Source of the DNA: Antechinus flavipes
Lineage: Eukaryota
DNA length: 64,000 nucleotides
Direction of reading: 5' to 3'
Assembly (NCBI RefSeq): GCF_016432865.1
Contig: NC_067399.1
Coordinates: 621,984,001-622,048,000, forward strand
In this document: piece after piece, positions 46,578 to 60,110 of the stretch
Layout: the number at the start of each line of letters is the position of its first letter
How positions within the stretch are numbered: position 1 is the first letter of the stretch
Notes under the pieces: generated by a model
Databases searched by the model: none
Seen by the model: only the letters and a program-made list of their open reading frames with translations
Told to the model about the DNA's origin: nothing
Position numbers and translations under genes: made by a program

Positions 46578-47497
46578 GTTCAAAGATATAGTGAGACATA
46601 AAGATGGAGTTTACACTGAAGCAATTGGCTGTTGGAATATATGAAAAAACTGGAATTCTCTTCCCAAGAAGTCTTTCCTTTGGATAAAAGTAAATGATTT
46701 TTTAAGTGCCTTGAAATCTCAGGATTTTTAAATTATGTCTTTCAGACTTGAAATCAATAATCCTCAGGGATGAATGAGACCCAAAAGACCAAGTCAGAAT
46801 CCTTCATTTTATAGATGAAACCCATGTGGCCAGTCCAACACTAAATAGCTAGTAAGCGGCAAAGTGCTAAACACAGAACTTTATTCCACTGTACTACACA
46901 ACTTCCGTCTCCTTCCCAGGACCTCATTCAGCCCCCAAATTACACAACTGGGTATATTGGAAGTCAATTCAAACATGGCTAGTTATAAGGTGAGTGCTAA
47001 TCCTGTCTTATGGCACATACCCTGTAATGGAATCCTTTGTACTTGTTCTTTGGGGATTTAGCACATAAGAACCACTCAGGAGGTTTAAACCTGTGATTCA
47101 TTCATTAGTTACAATACTATAACAAACTACCGTTTAAAGAACAGAATGGCAGGATCAGTTAAGTGTAGATGTTACAGAGGGACAGAGATAATGTGATCTA
47201 TGTTTCCTTGGCACAGACAGCTAGAGGAGCTTCCACTCTGGAGACTGGGAAGAATAAATAACACAACTGGCCAAAGAGTGGTTGAGTTTGAAAGATTTAG
47301 TGACAAAGAAGAGTGTTTGTCCTTTAGTGAGCTGGATGCAGTGGATCATCAGCATGATGCAGCTTGGAGAAGAATGAATCTTCTATGAATGATGAGGAGC
47401 TTTAGGTTGAAACCAAAAAGCAGTGAGTGTTGTAAGCTTGGAGATCAGAGAAGGGCTCTTGGTCTTTGCTTTCTCCATGGTTTCCTATTCTGGTTTG

Positions 47498-47589
47498 TTA
47501 TATCTGAGGAAGTGCCCCAGGGATCTTCTTACAAGGACTGATTTTGCCTTTACATAACTTGTAGTGTAGCGACATTTTTGGATTTCTCC
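47498..47589 (-). CDS. GPR15LG: GPR15LG/C10orf99 orthologue, exon 3 (92 bp): (G)RNPKMSLHYKLCKGKISPCKKIPGALPQI*
   Basis: Acceptor cttattctcag|GG, phase 1, TAA at 47500-47498. C-terminal PGALPQI matches the GPR15L signature PGALPQV. Confidence 0.92.
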
Positions 47590-47639
47590 CTGAGAATAAG
47601 AGAAGAAGGATTGGGTATGGGAGGAATGATGGATCAATA

Positions 47640-47905
47640 AAAAGGGAGGGGAGGGAGAGAGGTGAATGACAGAGATAGAGAGAAAACAGGGAGAAAGAAA
47701 GATGTGTATATAGAGAAGGAAAAATAGAGGGGGAGAAAGAGAGACAGAGACAGAAACAGAGAAAAAGAGAAATGGAGAGAGACACACAGACAGAGAGACA
47801 GAGAGAGAAAGAGAGAAATAGGGAGAAAAAATGAGAGAGCGAGAGGAGGGAAGAGAAGGAGAAGGAGGAGAAGGAGGAGAAGAAGGAGGAGGAAAGAAAA
47901 GGAGG
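47640..47905. repeat. Polypurine (GA/GGA/AGAC)n tract running into an assembly gap
   Basis: Near-continuous purines on the + strand, next to the GPR15LG exon 3 acceptor. Confidence 0.9.
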
Positions 47906-48390
47906 NNNNNNNNNNNNNNNNNNNNNNNNNNNNNNNNNNNNNNNNNNNNNNNNNNNNNNNNNNNNNNNNNNNNNNNNNNNNNNNNNNNNNNNNNNNNNNN
48001 NNNNNNNNNNNNNNNNNNNNNNNNNNNNNNNNNNNNNNNNNNNNNNNNNNNNNNNNNNNNNNNNNNNNNNNNNNNNNNNNNNNNNNNNNNNNNNNNNNNN
48101 NNNNNNNNNNNNNNNNNNNNNNNNNNNNNNNNNNNNNNNNNNNNNNNNNNNNNNNNNNNNNNNNNNNNNNNNNNNNNNNNNNNNNNNNNNNNNNNNNNNN
48201 NNNNNNNNNNNNNNNNNNNNNNNNNNNNNNNNNNNNNNNNNNNNNNNNNNNNNNNNNNNNNNNNNNNNNNNNNNNNNNNNNNNNNNNNNNNNNNNNNNNN
48301 NNNNNNNNNNNNNNNNNNNNNNNNNNNNNNNNNNNNNNNNNNNNNNNNNNNNNNNNNNNNNNNNNNNNNNNNNNNNNNNNNNNNNNNNNN
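47906..48390. other. Assembly gap (485 N) in GPR15LG intron 2
   Basis: Run of N. Confidence 0.99.
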
Positions 48391-48936
48391 AAGGCAGACA
48401 TATGTTTACAAAATCAAATACAATCAACACATGGGTGACAGTATCCCCAGCCCTATTACAGTGAAGTGAAAAATATGCTTTACTGGTAGATAACAGAAGG
48501 TGGTAGGAAATCTTATGTCTTAAGAAAACACATTTTTTAAAAAATCCAAGATTTGCAGATTCACTCCTTACTTGCCAAGAAGAAAAACACAGGGCTGATC
48601 CAGCTCAAAGAACTTTGGTGGTTCCCTGTTGACTCTAGGACAAATACTAACCCCTCAGTTTAATATTTAAAATTTTTTCTGTCTTCAACCTTTCCTTTCC
48701 ATGCTGTTTGTATGTTACTTCTCTCCCATATAATACATCACAGCCAATGTGATTAATTACTGTTCCCTATATATGCTCTATTTTTGTGCTTGCAAATTGA
48801 CCATTCTCTCTTCTCATCTCTCACTGCCTCTTGGAATCAATAATTTCCTTCAAGACACGTTACCATCAGCAAAATTATTTTACTGTAATAATGAACATAG
48901 ATATCTTTCATTGACCTTATACACCTAAAAAAGAGA

Positions 48937-48972
<36 letters not shown>

Positions 48973-49004
48973 GCATACATCATCTACATTTTATATAAAC
49001 TAGT

Positions 49005-49245
49005 TGTTTTTCAGTTATTTCAAGTGTATCCAACTCCTTGTGACCCCATTTGGAGTTTTCTTAGTAGTGATTCTGAAATGGTTGGCCATTTCCTTCTCCA
49101 GCTCCTTTTACAGATGAGGAAACTGAGGCAAATGAGGTTAAGTGATGGTCACTCAGGTAATAAGTTCTGAGGCCAGGTTTGAACTCAGGAAGATGAGCCT
49201 TCCTGACTCCAGGATCAGCACTCTATCCACTGTGCCATCTGGCTG
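49005..49245 (-). mobile_element. MAR1-type SINE in GPR15LG intron 2
   Basis: gttgttttcagt...tgtgaccccatttggagttttctt...ggttggccatttccttctccagctc...ctctatccactgtgccatctggctgcc. Confidence 0.8.
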
Positions 49246-50245
49246 CCTCTTTGTGTATATTAGACACATGATGAATGTTTTTTCCCCCTGAACCCAATTG
49301 AAGGAATGCCTGAGCATCTAAGGACCTCATCATCACATCTCTCCCCAGGTCTTGGATAAACCTGTTTAATAGCCACCAGCTGCTAAACCTCCTTTGAGGT
49401 CCTCCTGGGAGAACAGATTGGAGGATAGTGTTGGTATGGGAGGATATCGGCGTCTTTACCATCACCTCTTCCCCACTCCTCCTCTCCTCAGGTGGCTCAC
49501 ACTTCAATTTGGTGACTAGTAGAAGACTCAGTTATTTTTGCCCCTGGCTCCCACTTTGCCAGTCAGCCCTTCGGTGAACTTGAAAATGGGGAGGGATTGG
49601 GGAGAAGTGAGGATTGATAAAATCCAATAGCAAGACCCTGGGATAATCTTATCACATTATCTGTTTCCCTATAATTTCTAAATTCCTTACCTCACCCATT
49701 TACCTTGAATCCACAAGCCTAATGATTGAAAATTCTGAGAAGCTCTAGAAAGGATTTTTTTCCCCTTCCAGTTACTTAGTAGCTGAGAAGCAAAGAGACA
49801 GAGGATTACGCTCTTGACATCATATGATACAGGGGGTTACATATCTCTTTGATAACCTTCTCACAGTAGTGTTTTTAAATGCACAGGGTTACAAAGGAAG
49901 CCAATTATACTGTAATAAAATGATCTATTTATCTCTCTCTATTTATTTCTCTTATCTGTGTCTCATTGGACTCTGAGTTAATAATTCTAGATCTAATCTA
50001 ACTACGAAGATTCACTTCAGACAGAGACTCAGATGTTAAGTGACTTCTGATAAACAAATCTATTGTTCTTACAACCACTTCTTCCTCCTGCTCTCCCTTC
50101 CTCTGGTGATTGTGGGGTTAAAGGGGAGCCTTAGAAACTAGGAAAGATTCCCCCTTTTATTTCTCAAGTAAAATTATTGGTTCAGAGGTCCTGGAAATAA
50201 TCGTAGACTTCCGATAGCTCCAAAGGAAGAGACTGAACTGATTAC

Positions 50246-50320
50246 CTTTCAAACTTTTGAATGCATGGTTTGGACCATTATGGCAGCAAAGACCTTTCCG
50301 AGGTTTATTGCGTCTTGCAC
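50246..50320 (-). CDS. GPR15LG: GPR15LG/C10orf99 orthologue, exon 2 (75 bp): (G)ARRNKPRKGLCCHNGPNHAFKSLK(G)
   Basis: Acceptor gtctctccag|GT, donor AAAG|gtaatc, phase 1-1. Basic N-terminus, LCCH motif and LKG at the exon end parallel human RLCCHRVPSPNSTNLKG (recalled). Confidence 0.9.
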
Positions 50321-52482
50321 CTGGAGAGACATAAACAGAAACATTTCCATTCTGCAACAGGACTACTACACCTGTATGCACTCATAGTACATGTGTTCAC
50401 GTTCCATTAAATCAGATAGTGAAATTTCTAATTCTAAGCATTGGGTTTGAGACCTTAAATTACTTTCCCAAGTATTTAAAGAAAGATTTGATCCAAGATA
50501 TTCTGACTCCAAAATCAGGAACAATATTGTCTCCATTACAGCAGGCCCCAGGTAGTAAGGATGCATTGTCATGCATTTGGAGAGATAGAACATTAAAAAT
50601 CAAATAACTATAATGGCATATGATTAAGTATTTAATGAAAAGTAGAGCTAATAAATGCTTTCTAGCTTGAGGAGAGAGCTTGTGGGCTGGGGTAATCATG
50701 TAGGCAGACTTTCTGCCATCTCTTGTTGGAAGATTTAGAAAAGTTCTCACTCATTGACAATGAAAACTTTCAGGGACCTGAAATTAATTTTTTCTCCTTC
50801 CCTCTACCATTCCTCCTCATGCCCTCAAGCATTAAAGATTAAACTTAGCAAAAGCTGGGTTTTTCTGAAAGGCAACAGGATGCCATATTGTCCGCCTCTT
50901 TCCTTGGCCTCTCATGACAAATTTCTAGCTCTTAAATATGCACACCTTTTCTCTCAGCTAAGACAATGAATTAGGAGTCAAAGGGATTTTCATTTTCATT
51001 TCCTTTTTCAGGAATGGAGATTATAATAAACACATACATTCCCTGTGTGGACAAGCTGGGAAGCTTTCTGCAGGCACAATATATTCCTACATTTACAGAA
51101 CTGAATTTCACAGACATAGAATTTGAAAAAAGTCAGAATTTTTAGACAGCAGATTGGTATGATGGTGAAAAAATTGACCCCCGGGTGAGAAAACCCTGCC
51201 TCTATAATTCTGTCATGTAATGTCTTGGTGCTTCAGACACCTCTGTCAGATAGCCCATTGTCAATCTGCATTGGTAGAGGATGCTTTCCTGCCTGAAGTC
51301 TCCAAACTAAGGATGTCACAAGTCTGAACAAAAACAACAACAAAAAAATCTTCTTGCCTATATATCATTCATTCCAGGTTGAAAAAGACTCAGTCTGGCA
51401 ACTAGACTGGTGAGAAACCTTGGAATCCAGACAGACAGCTCTTCAGATCACAGGGAGGCATGAGAATTCAATCTCTATATCCAAAGTTCGAAATATTCCA
51501 TTTTTAAAGGACTCTCAGAGTCTAGAAGTAGTGCCGTTATCTTGGACAAGTCGGACAATTTCTTACTGTCCCTTTACTCTTTTCCCAAGCTTTTTGTTGG
51601 TGGAAGTTTGTGTTATGTCTTAGGTAAAAGTCTAAGTTATGCTTAAGATTAGGGACCTGGTAGATGCTTAGAAGCTTCAGAAGATGACGTATACATGGCT
51701 ATGATTCACTTAAAGAATCCCTAACTGAACTCAAAGTCTAGCCCACTTGGATGCTTGCCTCTGGAAATGTCTGAAGAATGGTCCAGGTGATTCCTTGAGC
51801 CCCTAACAATAACAGGCAGTTTTTGTACCCAGAGTAAGGACCACAAACCACAGCAAGATCCAATTACATGAAGCTCACTTTCAGCTAAGTTATGTTGTGT
51901 TGAATTAATCATCATGCAGCCTTTGTAAGGGATGCTATGGGGGACCAGGGAATGGGGAGATGAAGGACATGCTGGTATTCTACCTATTGTTGGGAGGCTG
52001 ATATACAGGGAGAAATGATGTTAGGGCTGGCAGAAGATGGAAAAGGATAGAGTCAGGTCAAAAAAGGAGCTGCCCTCAATCAATTCATTAATCATTATAA
52101 TAATACATTATACACATTAATATATAATATTATATACAATATGTTATGTTATAGGAATATTATATGTAACATATATCATATATTAAATAATGTAATTATA
52201 TAATAATAAATAGTTATTATGTGCCTACTATGTGGCAGTCACAGTGTTAAGCACTAGAGATACAAAAAGAAGCAAATGACAATCCTTACCCTCGAGGACT
52301 CCCATCGGAAAGTTTTCTATTTCAACTATTCTTAAAGACTGCAAGTGCTGTTAATACCTTTTAATATGGGTAGCCTGGGACAAAACTCCAGTTGTTCCAC
52401 CCTAGTTATGCCTTTGTCCCCAAAGGCCAACTGAAAGAGAAATTACAGCCTTACCCCCCACTTTCCCAAAGAAAGGCCATAC

Positions 52483-52552
52483 CTTCTGTAGAGAAGGCCA
52501 ACAAACACAGGAACAGGATATACAGGAGACTGGTGAAGTTGGGGAATTTCAT
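52483..52552 (-). CDS. GPR15LG: GPR15LG/C10orf99 orthologue, exon 1 (70 coding bp), signal peptide MKFPNFTSLLYILFLCLLAFSTE(G)
   Basis: ATG at 52552 (gccccagcATGa), donor GAAG|gtatgg in phase 1. Aligns without gaps to the recalled human signal MRLLVLSSLLCILLLCFSIFSTEG. Confidence 0.92.
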
Positions 52553-57273: not shown

Positions 57274-58145
57274 AACTATAGATTTCAAGTTACAGTGTGT
57301 CTGACTATGGCTAATCAGACCAATATGAGCTCAGAATGATCTGCCACAGGTCAGCCACAAGTAGTCCATGCGAACATTTGGGGTGGATTCTCTAATTTTG
57401 CACATCTCCCACTTCTTTTGAGCTATTGTACTCTGCTATGCTCATAGAACACAGCATCTCAGATGAGATACTCCATGGTGGGTGATCCTGTGCTTGTGTC
57501 TCTCATGTCACACAATCAATTCTTGAGAGTATCCTTCTGTTACTTTTTCTGACAACCACATGAGTACTTGACCTGTGTGAGTTCTACATAAAATAAGTCT
57601 TTTTGGCAAGCGTGCATTTGACATTTGAACAATGTGGTCAGCCAAACAGAGCTGTGCTCTCTGTAGTAGAGGTGGAATGCTTGGCAGTTCAGTTCAAGAA
57701 GGACCTCTGTGTCTGGCATCTTCTCCTGCCAGATGATCTTCAAAATCTTCCCGAGATAATTCAAATGGAAGTGATTTTGTTTACTGACAGGCGCTGGCAA
57801 ACGGTCCATGTGAAATGAGGTCAGAACAACACTCTGTAGACCTTCAGTTTGGGAGTCAGTCTAATACTTCTCCTTTCTCTCACTTTCCTTTGGAACCTCC
57901 CAAACACTAAGTTAGCTATGGCAATGTGTACATCAACCTCATTATCAATGTGGACACCCCTGGAAAGTGTACCCCCCAAATCAGTGACCTTATCCACAGC
58001 ATTTAAAACTTCTCCATTTGCTGCAACCAATTGTTTCACATATGGCTGATGGAATACCTGTGTTTTCTTGACTCTAATATAGTGATATCATTTTGGTCCT
58101 CTGAGGATAAAGGACAGCAACCAACCAACCAACTATAACTTTCAA
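57274..58145. mobile_element. RTE-clade LINE fragment with 5' inversion: body on - (about 57285-58070), terminal tail on + (about 58067-58130), 15-bp TSD
   Basis: Minus-strand ORFs 57821..58039 (ANGEVLNAVDKVTDLGGTLSRGVHIDNEVD) and 57540..57809 (HLNYLGKILKIIWQEKMPDTEVL) are RTE RT C-terminal sequence. The + strand tail ends in (CAAC)n. TSD aactata(ga/ac)tttcaa at 57274-57288 and 58131-58145. Confidence 0.85.
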
Positions 58146-58718: not shown

Positions 58719-60110
58719 TTTTTAAACTTAATTTTTTTCTTCTTTTTTTTAATTAAAGTTTTTTATTTATAAAACACATGCATGGGTAATTCTTCACCAT
58801 TGACCCGTGCAAAGCCTTTTGTTCCAAATTATCCCTTCCTTCTCCCCACTCTTTCCTCTAAATGGCAGGTAGTCCAATACATGTTGAATGTGTTAAAATA
58901 TGTTAAATCAAATATATATATATACATATTTAAATAGTTGTCTTGCTGCACAAGAAAAATCGGATCAATAAGGAAAAAAAACCTGGGAAAGAAAACAAAA
59001 TGCAAGCAAATAACAACAGAGAGTGTCTGAATGCTATGTTGTCTTCCATCTCTCTGTGGGTGTAGATGGCTCTATCCATCATTGAACAAGTAGAATTGGT
59101 TTGAATCATCTCATTGTTGAAGAGAGCCACATCCATTAGAATTGATCCTCATATAGTCTTGTTGTTGAAGTATATAATGATCTCCCAGTTCTGCTATTTC
59201 ACTTAGCATCAGTTCATGTAAGTCTTGCCAAACCTTTCTGAAATCATCCTGCTGGTTATTTCTTACAGAACAATAATATTCCATAACATTCATATACCAC
59301 AATTTACCCAACCATTCTCCAACTGATAGACATCCACTCAGTTTCCAGTTTCTGACCACTACAAAAAGGGCTGCCACAAACATTTTTGCACATGTGGGTC
59401 CCTTTCCCTCCTTTAAGATCTCTTTGGGGTATAAGCCCAGTAGAAACACTGATGGATCAAAAGGTATCCACAGTTTGATAACTTTTTGAACATAATTCCA
59501 AATTGCTCTCCAGAATGGCTGGATCCATTCACAATTCCACCAACAATGTATTAGTGTCCCAGTTTTCCCACATCCTCTACATTTGTCATTATTTTTTCCT
59601 GTCATCTTAGCCAATCTGGGGTGTGTAGTGGTACTTCAGAGTTGTCTTAATTTGCATTTCTCTGATCAATAGTGATTTGGAACAGCTTTTCATATGACTG
59701 GAAATAGTTTCAATTTCTTCATCTGAAAATTGTCTGTTCATATCCTTTGACCATTTATCAATTGGAGAATGGTTTGAATTTTTATAAAGTTGAATCAATT
59801 ATTTCTAAATTTTGGAAATGAGGCCTTTATCAGAACCTTTGAATGTAAAAATGTTTTCCCAGTTTATTCTTTCATTCTAATCTTGTCTGTATTACTTTTG
59901 TTTATACAAAAAAAAACTTTTTAACTTAATATAATCAAAATTTTCTATTTGGTGATCAATAATGATCTCTAGTTCTTTGGTCACCAATTTCTTCCTCCTC
60001 CACAGATCTGAGAGGTAAACTAGTCTATGTTCTTCTAATTTGTTTATAATATCATTCTTTATGTCTAGATTATGAATTCATTTTGACTTTATTTTGGTAT
60101 ATGGTGTTAT
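58719..60110 (-). mobile_element. 5'-truncated L1 (about 1.4 kb) inserted into an L2 element
   Basis: ORF 59111..59614 (CGKTGTLIHCWWNC...LYPKEILKEGKGPTCAKMFVAALFVV) is the L1 ORF2p cysteine-rich C-terminus. TSD gttctt at 58713-58718 and 60111-60116. L2-like sequence continues on both sides. Confidence 0.92.

What the first reader, a model, noticed from the sequence alone, without database searches (positions are those of the whole stretch)
47498..47589. Rewired cysteine spacing and a much shorter receptor-binding tail in this GPR15L
Seen in sequence: the mature peptide has CC-x24-C-x6-C and only 10 residues (KKIPGALPQI) after the last Cys. Recalled human peptide: CC-x18-C-x2-C followed by an 18-residue tail ([18 protein letters not shown]), whose last 11 or so residues activate GPR15. 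The best alignment is LCK[GKIS]PCK against LCKPCK, giving a 4-aa insertion between the Cys pair and an 8-aa shorter linker. The Trp of the human agonist segment has no counterpart and a Cys sits at the position of the 11th residue from the end. Inference: the agonist tail would be tethered directly to the disulfide core. Alternatively, the KK dibasic site could release a free IPGALPQI octapeptide. Either implies a different activation geometry or co-evolved GPR15 residues.
Basis: partly seen in the sequence, partly recalled or inferred. Interest (0 to 1): 0.7.

Follow-up and report, generated by a model that had tools for sequence, protein, structure and literature searches.

The report
Marsupial-type GPR15 ligand, shifted cysteine
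This is the last coding exon of the annotated GPR15 ligand gene of the yellow-footed antechinus. Its odd cysteine spacing and short receptor-binding tail are real, but all seven marsupials sampled share them, so it is a modest lineage variant of a known immune peptide rather than a peculiarity of this genome.

Summary
Window 47589-47498 (minus strand) is exon 3 of a three-exon gene. The protein it predicts is identical to RefSeq 'protein GPR15LG [Antechinus flavipes]' (P0001, 78 aa; Pfam GPR15L 47 bits against a cut-off of 27). The pattern is CC-x24-C-x6-C followed by a 10-residue tail, KKIPGALPQI.

The pattern is not specific to this genome. All seven marsupials found have C-x6/7-C and the invariant tail CK[KR]IPGALPQ[IL]. 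The nine eutherian species sampled, plus the human PDB chain, have C-x2-C, an 18-residue tail and a Trp at position -10. A duck has CC-x26-C-x2-C, a 16-residue tail and no Trp.

So the long CC-to-Cys3 spacer and the missing Trp look ancestral. Only the position of the last Cys, 10 residues from the end, is marsupial-derived.

Published cryo-EM work puts 10 ligand residues inside the human pocket, so the "tail tethered to the core" inference is reasonable. Release of an octapeptide is unlikely. One lead supports co-evolution: marsupial GPR15 ECL2 reads KK->EP opposite ligand WV->K[KR], but this comes from machine-read (OCR) supplement text only. Read-level RNA evidence could not be obtained.

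The parts
52483..52552 (-). GPR15LG coding exon 1: start codon at 52552-52550, signal peptide (MKFPNF...AFSTE) and the first base of the Gly24 codon. The GT donor is at 52482-52481.
   Evidence: Found by a scan for an ATG, a hydrophobic stretch and a phase-1 donor. Sequence read. Pfam PF15854 GPR15L matches this exon alone at E=9.5e-5. The donor context GTATGGCC is identical in the devil.
50246..50320 (-). Coding exon 2 (75 nt, phase 1 at both ends): the basic N-terminal part of the mature peptide. The CC motif is at 50288-50283.
   Evidence: Sequence with AG acceptor at 50322-50321 and GT donor at 50245-50244. The splice contexts are identical in the devil.
47498..47589 (-). Coding exon 3, which is the finding. 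It encodes (G)RNPKMSLHYKL-C-KGKISP-C-KKIPGALPQI; the stop codon is at 47500-47498.
   Evidence: The three-exon model is identical to P0001, RefSeq GPR15LG of Antechinus flavipes.
47531..47554 (-). Cys3 (47554-47552), the six-residue loop KGKISP, and Cys4 (47533-47531). This is the marsupial-type widened Cys pair. Antechinus has lost one residue relative to the x7 seen in five other marsupials.
   Evidence: Alignment A2, spacing table, and the net 3-bp deletion against the devil.
47501..47530 (-). The 10-residue C-terminal tail KKIPGALPQI. It is presumed to be the whole segment that inserts into the GPR15 pocket. K[KR]IPGALPQ is invariant in seven marsupials; the last residue is I in six and L in the devil.
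   Evidence: Human cryo-EM work reports 10 ligand residues in the pocket (PMC11199581), with residues 44-57 resolved (PMC12663730).
46880..46885 (-). First AATAAA downstream of the stop codon, a candidate polyadenylation signal that would give a 3'UTR of about 0.6 kb.
   Evidence: Motif scan. Two small runs of unknown type hold 93-96% of the sampled words of 46860-47600. Not confirmed by reads.
20594..20860 (-). Cadherin-repeat exon inside a stop-free segment, downstream of GPR15LG on the same strand, as expected for CDHR1.
   Evidence: Pfam Cadherin E=4.8e-4, below the gathering score because it is only a fragment. Orthology to CDHR1 was not tested.
6202..6474 (-). A second cadherin-repeat exon inside a stop-free segment, on the same strand.
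   Evidence: Pfam Cadherin E=6.5e-4.

Best explanation
The finding is the terminal coding exon of the genuine, already annotated GPR15LG (C10orf99, AP-57) orthologue of Antechinus flavipes.

Shown here: the gene has three coding exons with phase-1 introns. [quoted passage not shown] The mature peptide is strongly basic (pI 10.6; 14 Lys+Arg, no acidic residue) and has four Cys. Its architecture is the marsupial-wide one: a long CC-to-Cys3 spacer, a widened Cys3-x6/7-Cys4 pair and an invariant 10-residue tail, CK[KR]IPGALPQ[IL].

Inferred: the full-length, disulfide-bonded peptide is the agonist of marsupial GPR15. The conserved PGALPQ[IL] end occupies the deep sub-pocket as in human. Only 10 residues follow Cys4, which is the number of ligand residues inside the human pocket. 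So the whole tail is the pocket segment, and the Cys4 disulfide sits at the pocket mouth next to ECL2. The eutherian seven- to eight-residue linker and the Trp are absent. The basic K[KR] pair replaces the eutherian W-V at the ECL2 contact. The cationic core binds the acidic, probably sulfated, receptor N-terminus through charge.

By outgroup comparison, the long spacer and the lack of Trp are ancestral-like. Only the position of Cys4 is a marsupial novelty.
For: Identity:
- The exon model equals P0001, 'protein GPR15LG [Antechinus flavipes]' (100% identity, 78 aa).
- Pfam PF15854 scores 47.2 bits against a cut-off of 27, covering profile positions 1-77 of 77.
- The splice sites are canonical and identical to those of the devil locus L001.
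- Cadherin exons lie downstream on the same strand.

Clade-wide pattern:
- Seven marsupials share tail10 and C-x6/7-C: Dasyuromorphia, Peramelemorphia, Diprotodontia and Microbiotheria.
- Eutherians share C-x2-C with tail18 and a Trp (human PDB chain).
- Duck has CC-x26-C-x2-C with tail16, ending LRIPGPLPQLK, with no Trp.

Constraint:
- Antechinus and devil differ by 12 nonsynonymous and 0 synonymous changes in 75 codons. dN is 0.071 against an intron-1 divergence of 0.057. No amino-acid change touches the four Cys or CKKIPGALPQ; only the last residue differs, I against L.

Mechanism, from published work:
- Ten C-terminal residues fill the human pocket, and the C11 peptide is about 40-fold weaker than the full-length ligand (PMC11199581).
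- Human residues 1-43 are unresolved and flexible; residues 44-57 lie in the cavity; the carboxylate contacts K192; C-terminal extension lowers potency (PMC12663730).
- A spotted gar orthologue with an even shorter tail after its last Cys (machine-read text, about 6-8 residues) activates its own GPR15 at about 10 nM, and activity depends on the C-terminus (Yao et al. 2026).
- The koala homologue was detected in the milk proteome (PMC5054531).
- Basic character.
Against: - No functional data exist for any marsupial GPR15LG or GPR15.
- Disulfide connectivity is not established even for human in the papers I read.
- The human core is flexible in cryo-EM, so 'geometry of the core' may matter little.
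- No didelphid or monotreme ligand sequence was recovered, so the age of the Cys4 shift and the ancestral therian state rest on one exact bird sequence plus noisy machine-read supplement text.
- The signal-peptide cleavage site is assumed by homology.
Confidence: 0.72

Rival explanations
1. The conserved K-K/K-R pair directly after Cys4 is a prohormone-convertase site. Under this reading the active marsupial ligand is a free C-terminal octapeptide, IPGALPQ[IL], and the disulfide core serves only as a pro-region or an antimicrobial moiety.
For: The dibasic pair is invariant in seven marsupials and absent at that position in eutherians. Short C-terminal peptides of human GPR15L do activate GPR15 (PMC11199581; PMC5594226).
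Against: - The whole peptide is rich in Lys and Arg, with other dibasic pairs such as RR near the mature N-terminus. The human mature 57-mer keeps its KRR start (review PMC10348422; PDB chain of 58 residues). Dibasic pairs in this family are therefore not routinely cleaved.
- The motif is not a furin R-X-[KR]-R site: P4 is Ser or Leu.
- GPR15L is made by epithelia rather than neuroendocrine cells (my own knowledge, plus PMC5594226).
- Human C11 is already 40- to 100-fold weaker than the full-length ligand, and the pocket holds 10 residues. An 8-mer would lose two pocket residues and the entire core.
- The duck has a single Arg at the same place (LRIPG), which points to a binding role for the basic residue rather than a processing role.
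Confidence: 0.07
2. In marsupials the peptide has been re-purposed, mainly as a cationic antimicrobial or milk defence peptide or as a ligand of another receptor. The unusual Cys4 position would then reflect relaxed constraint on GPR15 agonism.
For: - The core evolves fast: 12 nonsynonymous against 0 synonymous changes between two dasyurids.
- The koala homologue is present in late-lactation milk, where it was discussed as an antimicrobial peptide (PMC5054531).
- The human peptide has reported antimicrobial activity and reported binding to CXCR4, ACKR3 and GPR182.
Against: - CK[KR]IPGALPQ is invariant in seven marsupials from four orders while the core changes freely; the last residue is I or L. 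This is the signature of a conserved receptor-activating end, and it matches the human deep-pocket motifs GAL and PQV.
- GPR15 itself is retained and conserved in marsupials (Table S3 of Yao et al.).
- Fast core evolution is also the rule in eutherians and fish whose orthologues are active.
Confidence: 0.1
3. The pattern is an annotation or assembly artefact. The true transcript would use another acceptor or another terminal exon, possibly hidden in the N run in intron 2, that restores a human-like C-x2-C and a long tail.
For: Intron 2 contains an unresolved N run (47906-48390), and no read-level RNA evidence was obtained.
Against: - The same exon 3 reading, the same frame and identical splice-site contexts occur in the devil genome.
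- Independent annotations of five further marsupials give the same protein end.
- The window has only one PGxLPx-encoding frame and no WVVPG frame.
- Pfam matches the model end to end.
- A koala homologue was detected as protein.
Confidence: 0.03

Closest known systems
Human and eutherian GPR15LG (C10orf99, AP-57, CSBF); PDB 9wxm chain L; GPR15 complexes with C11 and with the full-length ligand (PMC11199581, PMC12663730)
   Same: - Same Pfam family (PF15854).
- Three coding exons, with the signal peptide ending in FSTEG or a similar motif.
- A CC motif 12 residues before the exon 2/3 junction Gly.
- Four Cys and a very basic mature peptide.
- A C-terminal PGALPQ[IV] that fills the deep GPR15 sub-pocket in human.
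   Different: - Eutherians have C-x2-C, an 18-residue tail and W-[VI]-V before PG.
- Marsupials have C-x6/7-C, a 10-residue tail and K-[KR]-I before PG.
- The spacer from the junction Gly to Cys3 is 5-9 residues in eutherians and 11 here.
- The eutherian linker between the last Cys and the pocket segment has no counterpart here.
Avian GPR15LG (Anas acuta XP_068544092, here P0029, and P0012)
   Same: - A long CC-to-Cys3 spacer (x26 against x24), with a similar G-x-P-x-K start to the exon 3 part.
- No Trp.
- A basic residue two positions before PG (LRIPG against K[KR]IPG).
- The same number of residues from Cys3 to the C-terminal hydrophobic residue as in the x7 marsupials (18).
   Different: The bird keeps C-x2-C, so its last Cys lies 16 residues from the end. 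It has PGPLPQL plus an extra C-terminal Lys.
Spotted gar Lo-GPR15LG and other fish orthologues (Yao et al. 2026, bioRxiv 10.64898/2026.06.02.729464)
   Same: These show that a short tail directly after the last Cys is compatible with nanomolar, C-terminus-dependent activation of the cognate GPR15. They also show that Cys spacing and core sequence are highly labile across vertebrates.
   Different: - Mostly C-x2-C; Amia appears to have C-x5-C.
- C-terminal motif of the [LI]-P type rather than PGALPQI.
- No cross-activity with human GPR15.
- The sequences were available to me only as error-prone machine-read text.
CC chemokines; chemerin, apelin and ELABELA as peptide ligands activated through the C-terminus
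   Same: - Small cationic secreted attractants with a CC motif and two presumed disulfides.
- Two-site binding: the core binds the sulfated receptor N-terminus and a terminal segment enters the transmembrane pocket.
   Different: There is no sequence homology to chemokines. The activating end is the C-terminus rather than the N-terminus, and no chemokine fold is predicted (PMC10348422).

Membership tests
GPR15LG / GPR15L (Pfam PF15854) | Match to the family profile above the curated gathering score | tested here: met
   P0001, which is identical to the window model, scores 47.2 bits against a cut-off of 27 and aligns to profile positions 1-77 of 77. Exon 1 alone scores 23 bits.
GPR15LG / GPR15L | Small secreted precursor (under 100 aa) with an N-terminal signal peptide | tested here: met
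   The precursor is 78 aa. It has a hydrophobic N-terminal stretch ending in AFSTEG, as in human FSTEG. No dedicated signal-peptide predictor was available, so the cleavage site is assumed by homology.
GPR15LG / GPR15L | Three (rarely four) coding exons: exon 1 for the signal peptide, exon 2 for the CC region, exon 3 for the Cys pair and activating C-terminus | tested here: met
   Exons at 52552-52483, 50320-50246 and 47589-47498, with GT-AG phase-1 introns. The devil has the same structure. This layout is described for human and rodents in PMC5594226 and for other vertebrates by Yao et al..
GPR15LG / GPR15L | Highly basic mature peptide (pI typically above 10) | tested here: met
   pI 10.63, 14 Lys+Arg, no Asp or Glu.
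GPR15LG / GPR15L | Four Cys in a CC...C...C arrangement | tested here: met
   CC-x24-C-x6-C. The arrangement is met, but the spacing of the second pair is not the common x2.
GPR15LG / GPR15L | Conserved C-terminal segment with a Leu/Ile-Pro dipeptide | tested here: met
   The peptide ends in PGALPQI. PGALPQ is identical to the human and eutherian ligands.
GPR15LG / GPR15L | Synteny: located between GHITM and CDHR1 | tested here: inconclusive
   Two cadherin-repeat exons lie downstream on the same strand, which is consistent with CDHR1 but was not resolved to orthologue level. The 11 kb upstream holds only repeat-like frames, including an L1 ORF2 fragment. GHITM is not within the window.
GPR15LG / GPR15L | Agonist of the cognate GPR15 through its C-terminus | not testable with these tools
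   This requires receptor assays with a marsupial ligand and receptor.
Eutherian-type GPR15LG architecture | C-x2-C followed by an 18-residue tail containing W-[VI]-V-P-G | tested here: not met
   This peptide has C-x6-C, a 10-residue tail and K-K-I-P-G. All sampled eutherians meet the feature and none of the seven marsupials does.

The most novel reading that the evidence does not exclude
Marsupials may have remodelled the outer half of the GPR15 ligand-receptor interface in a reciprocal way.

On the ligand, the last Cys moved to the rim of the pocket, and the eutherian W-V contact residues are K-[KR].

On the receptor, the ECL2 segment that contacts those residues in the human complex (Y182-K187, YCAEKK) reads YCAEEP in Table S3 of Yao et al. 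That reading holds in all five marsupials listed there, including a didelphid. It amounts to a Lys-Lys to Glu-Pro change opposite a hydrophobic-to-dibasic change.

If real, this is a compensatory charge swap. It would predict that marsupial and eutherian ligand-receptor pairs are mutually incompatible, and that the disulfide-bonded core docks directly on ECL2.
Probability: 0.3. Interest if true: 0.5.

Novelty: new variant of a known kind. Interest (0 to 1): 0.3.

Why it matters
GPR15 and GPR15LG guide T cells to the colon and skin, and the pair is a drug target. Structural work so far rests on the human pair alone.

The marsupial ligand is a natural experiment. It keeps the deep-pocket heptapeptide unchanged. 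It deletes the linker, replaces the Trp-Val ECL2 contact with Lys-Lys/Arg, and places a disulfide at the pocket mouth. Testing it would show how much of the outer interface and linker is really needed for potency, and whether the 40- to 100-fold gain of the full-length ligand over C11 depends on core-to-pocket spacing.

The comparison also corrects a human-centred view. By outgroup comparison, the Trp and the short CC-to-Cys3 spacer are eutherian innovations. Beyond that, the gene is ordinary and already annotated.

Tried and rejected
- Pfam on exon 2 or exon 3 alone gave no match because the pieces are too short.
- A word search with the exon 3 reference returned only the window's own protein. 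A profile word search (A1) returned only marsupials. Eutherians and the duck came only from the exhaustive HMMER representative search, which listed 12 hits and no monotreme or didelphid ligand.
There is therefore no junction-read evidence.
- Runs X12 and X13 hold 93-96% of the sampled words of exon 3 plus the 3'UTR in only about 73 million letters. Their type is unknown, so I do not count them as expression evidence.
- The search of earlier findings found nothing for 'GPR15'.
- Disulfide connectivity was not stated in the papers I read.
- The ECL2 block of the GPR15 alignment (Fig. S15) is not in the part of the held supplement text that I read, part 12 of 13. The ECL2 lead therefore rests on the machine-read Table S3. 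That text demonstrably drops letters elsewhere; for example, the wombat ligand row differs from the exact P0003.
- GHITM was not found in the 11 kb upstream.
It appears only at lenient gap costs or for the x6 Antechinus sequence.
- I did not run a structure prediction. The core is reported as flexible and without predicted secondary structure, and the tool returns no Cys-Cys distances.

Full report
OBSERVATION. On the minus strand, 47589-47498 follows a polypyrimidine tract and an AG acceptor. It translates to RNPKMSLHYKLCKGKISPCKKIPGALPQI followed by a stop. The two leading bases GG complete a Gly codon begun in the previous exon.

GENE MODEL.
- A scan of the minus strand upstream found exon 2 at 50320-50246. 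It encodes a basic stretch ending ...KGLCCHNGPNHAFKSLK, with an AG acceptor and a GTAAT donor.
- The same scan found exon 1 at 52552-52483. It encodes MKFPNF...AFSTE plus one base, with a GTATGG donor.
- Both introns are phase 1. The coding length is 70+75+92 = 237 nt, which gives 78 codons plus a stop.
- I did not submit a hand-joined model to any search. A word search with an exon 3 reference returned P0001, 'protein GPR15LG [Antechinus flavipes]', 78 aa and 100% identical. Its sequence equals the three-exon model. From then on I used P0001 by id.
- P0001 matches Pfam PF15854 (GPR15L) end to end at 47.2 bits against a cut-off of 27.
- The window therefore comes from the yellow-footed antechinus, and the gene is already annotated.
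- Two cadherin-repeat exons lie downstream on the same strand, as expected for CDHR1. GHITM is not within the 11 kb upstream.

IS IT DISTINCTIVE? Spacing by group:

| Group | Species and source | Pattern |
|---|---|---|
| Marsupials | Sarcophilus, Vombatus, Phascolarctos, Petaurus, Macrotis, Dromiciops and Antechinus | CC-x24 (x18 in Macrotis), C-x7-C (x6 in Antechinus and Macrotis), 10-residue tail CK[KR]IPGALPQ[IL] |
| Eutherians | Two Rhinolophus bats, Microcebus, Catagonus, Sus, Phacochoerus, four arvicoline rodents, Dipodomys | CC-x18 (x22 in Microcebus), C-x2-C, 18-residue tail with W-[VI]-V-P-G |
| Duck | Anas acuta and a near-identical transcript contig | CC-x26, C-x2-C, 16-residue tail ending LRIPGPLPQLK, no Trp |

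The marsupial tail is invariant. But the trait belongs to marsupials as a group. The only Antechinus-specific element is a net 3-bp deletion in the Cys3-Cys4 loop relative to the devil.

POLARITY.
- Table S2 of Yao et al. 2026 (bioRxiv 10.64898/2026.06.02.729464) lists birds, lizards and many fishes with C-x2-C. There are occasional exceptions.
- The same table shows no Trp before the PG or LP motif, and tails after the last Cys from about 6 to 18 residues.
- That text is machine-read and drops letters, so I use it only qualitatively.
- Together with the exact duck sequence, it indicates that the long CC-to-Cys3 spacer and the lack of Trp are ancestral-like. The shortened spacer and the Trp are eutherian innovations. 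The wide Cys3-Cys4 pair, with Cys4 only 10 residues from the end, is the marsupial novelty.

INDELS OR A MOVING CYSTEINE?
- HMMER aligned the marsupial profile to the human chain differently. It placed marsupial Cys3 on human Cys4, with a single 3-residue gap. MAFFT L-INS-i did the same and also put duck Cys3 in that column.
- The count from that column to the C-terminal hydrophobic residue is 18 in x7 marsupials, 18 in eutherians (from Cys4) and 18 in duck (from Cys3, ignoring its extra Lys).
- In pairwise BLOSUM62 alignments, wombat against duck is gapless from Cys3 to the end at standard and strict gap costs.
- Which Cys is homologous to which therefore cannot be settled from sequence. A partner Cys relocating around a positionally fixed Cys, on a backbone of constant length, fits at least as well as paired indels.

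WHAT IT MEANS FOR BINDING.
- In the human C11 complex, 10 ligand residues ([10 protein letters not shown]) lie in the pocket. They are divided into the motifs WVVP, GAL and PQV. The main chains of the W and V residues bond to E185 of ECL2. Mutating Y182, C183, E185 or K187 reduces activation. C11 is about 40-fold weaker than the full-length ligand (PMC11199581).
- In the full-length complex, ligand residues 1-43 are unresolved and residues 44-57 lie in the cavity. The W48-V50 stretch packs on ECL2 Y182-K187. The terminal carboxylate pairs with K192, and adding residues at the C-terminus lowers potency (PMC12663730).
- The marsupial tail is exactly 10 residues. The deep part, PGALPQ[IL], is unchanged and the outer part is K-[KR]-I-P. 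Cys4 occupies the position of human L47.
The consequence may be limited, though, because the human core is flexible.
- A fish precedent exists. The gar ligand, with a very short tail after its last Cys, binds and activates gar GPR15 at about 10 nM in a C-terminus-dependent way.

CO-EVOLUTION LEAD.
- In Table S3 of Yao et al., ECL2 reads ...PYCAEEPATLSK... in all five marsupial GPR15 sequences listed: Sarcophilus, Vombatus, Phascolarctos, the didelphid Gracilinanus, and Dromiciops.
- Eutherians read ...PYCAEKK... or ...AEKR... in the same place. Birds read ...YCTDKA....
- With the published human numbering, this is K186E and K187P. It lies opposite the ligand change W-V to K-[KR].
- The charge reversal is suggestive.

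OCTAPEPTIDE ALTERNATIVE. The K-[KR] pair is conserved, but several points count against cleavage there.
- The family is full of dibasic pairs that are not cleaved in the known mature forms.
- The site is not a furin consensus.
- The duck has a single Arg at that position.
- An 8-mer would lack two pocket residues and the potency-conferring core.
I rate this alternative as unlikely.

RATE OF CHANGE. Antechinus and devil differ by 12 nonsynonymous and 0 synonymous substitutions in 75 whole codons. For this count I listed the in-frame whole codons of the three exons one after another inside the script; nothing joined was searched. dN is 0.071 and intron-1 divergence is 0.057; Fisher p = 0.07, which is not significant. 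The core evolves at about the neutral rate or faster, while the Cys residues and the tail are fixed. This fits a charge-based core and a sequence-specific tail (discussion of Yao et al.).

EXPRESSION. A koala homologue was detected in the late-lactation milk proteome (PMC5054531). For Antechinus I have only the RefSeq model and two small runs of unknown type that hold 93-96% of the sampled words of exon 3 plus the 3'UTR.

LIMITS AND RULES OBSERVED.
- The N run at 47906-48390 in intron 2 was left as it is.
- No human contig was fetched. The human ligand was seen only as the PDB alignment printed and in papers.

VERDICT. This is a lineage-wide marsupial variant of a known and already annotated peptide. 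Its sequences have appeared in a published table without comment on this feature. Interest is modest. The most interesting untested possibility is reciprocal ligand-ECL2 remodelling.

Noticed in passing
window 47498-52552 against L001 3001-8060: Between Antechinus and Tasmanian devil GPR15LG, all 12 coding differences in whole codons are nonsynonymous and none is synonymous. dN (0.071) exceeds the intron-1 divergence (0.057). The numbers are small (Fisher p = 0.07), but the pattern suggests very weak constraint or positive selection on the core.
   Followed up: partly
window 47620-47905 and 47906-48390: Intron 2 carries a long GA/GGA-rich low-complexity tract that runs into a 485-base N run. 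Places 47758-47828 inside the tract tripped the reads-tool filter. None of this was filled in or searched.
   Followed up: no
window 59114-59635 (minus strand): A 174-codon open frame resembles the C-terminal part of LINE-1 ORF2 (my recognition of the motif; not tested). The region upstream of GPR15LG appears to be mostly repeats.
   Followed up: no
window 57274-58145: An earlier scan note (s1-198839) calls this an RTE LINE insertion with twin priming. I saw open frames there but did not examine them.
   Followed up: no
window 6202-6474 and 20594-20860 (minus strand): Cadherin-repeat exons lie on the same strand downstream of GPR15LG. They are presumably CDHR1, the conserved neighbour of this gene.
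   Followed up: partly
proteins P0008/P0019/P0020, P0013, P0015, P0025: Several public GPR15LG models look mis-built. The 126-aa Rhinolophus forms have an N-terminal extension. The 124-aa Dipodomys form has about 46 extra residues between CC and Cys3, which looks like retained intron. A 146-aa model loses the Cys pair and the tail after exon 2. A 64-aa pig member of the GPR15LG cluster is named 'Apelin receptor early endogenous ligand' in UniRef.
   Followed up: no
window 46860-47600; runs X12 and X13: Two runs of only about 73 million letters from one 2021 study hold 93-96% of the sampled words of exon 3 plus the presumed 3'UTR. That would be unlikely for low-coverage genomic DNA, so they may be transcript or long-read data.
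   Followed up: partly
Microcebus P0009 and Macrotis P0006: The CC-to-Cys3 spacer is labile within both clades. It is x22 in mouse lemur against x18 in other eutherians, and x18 in bilby (a 6-residue deletion in the exon 2 part) against x24 in other marsupials.
   Followed up: partly
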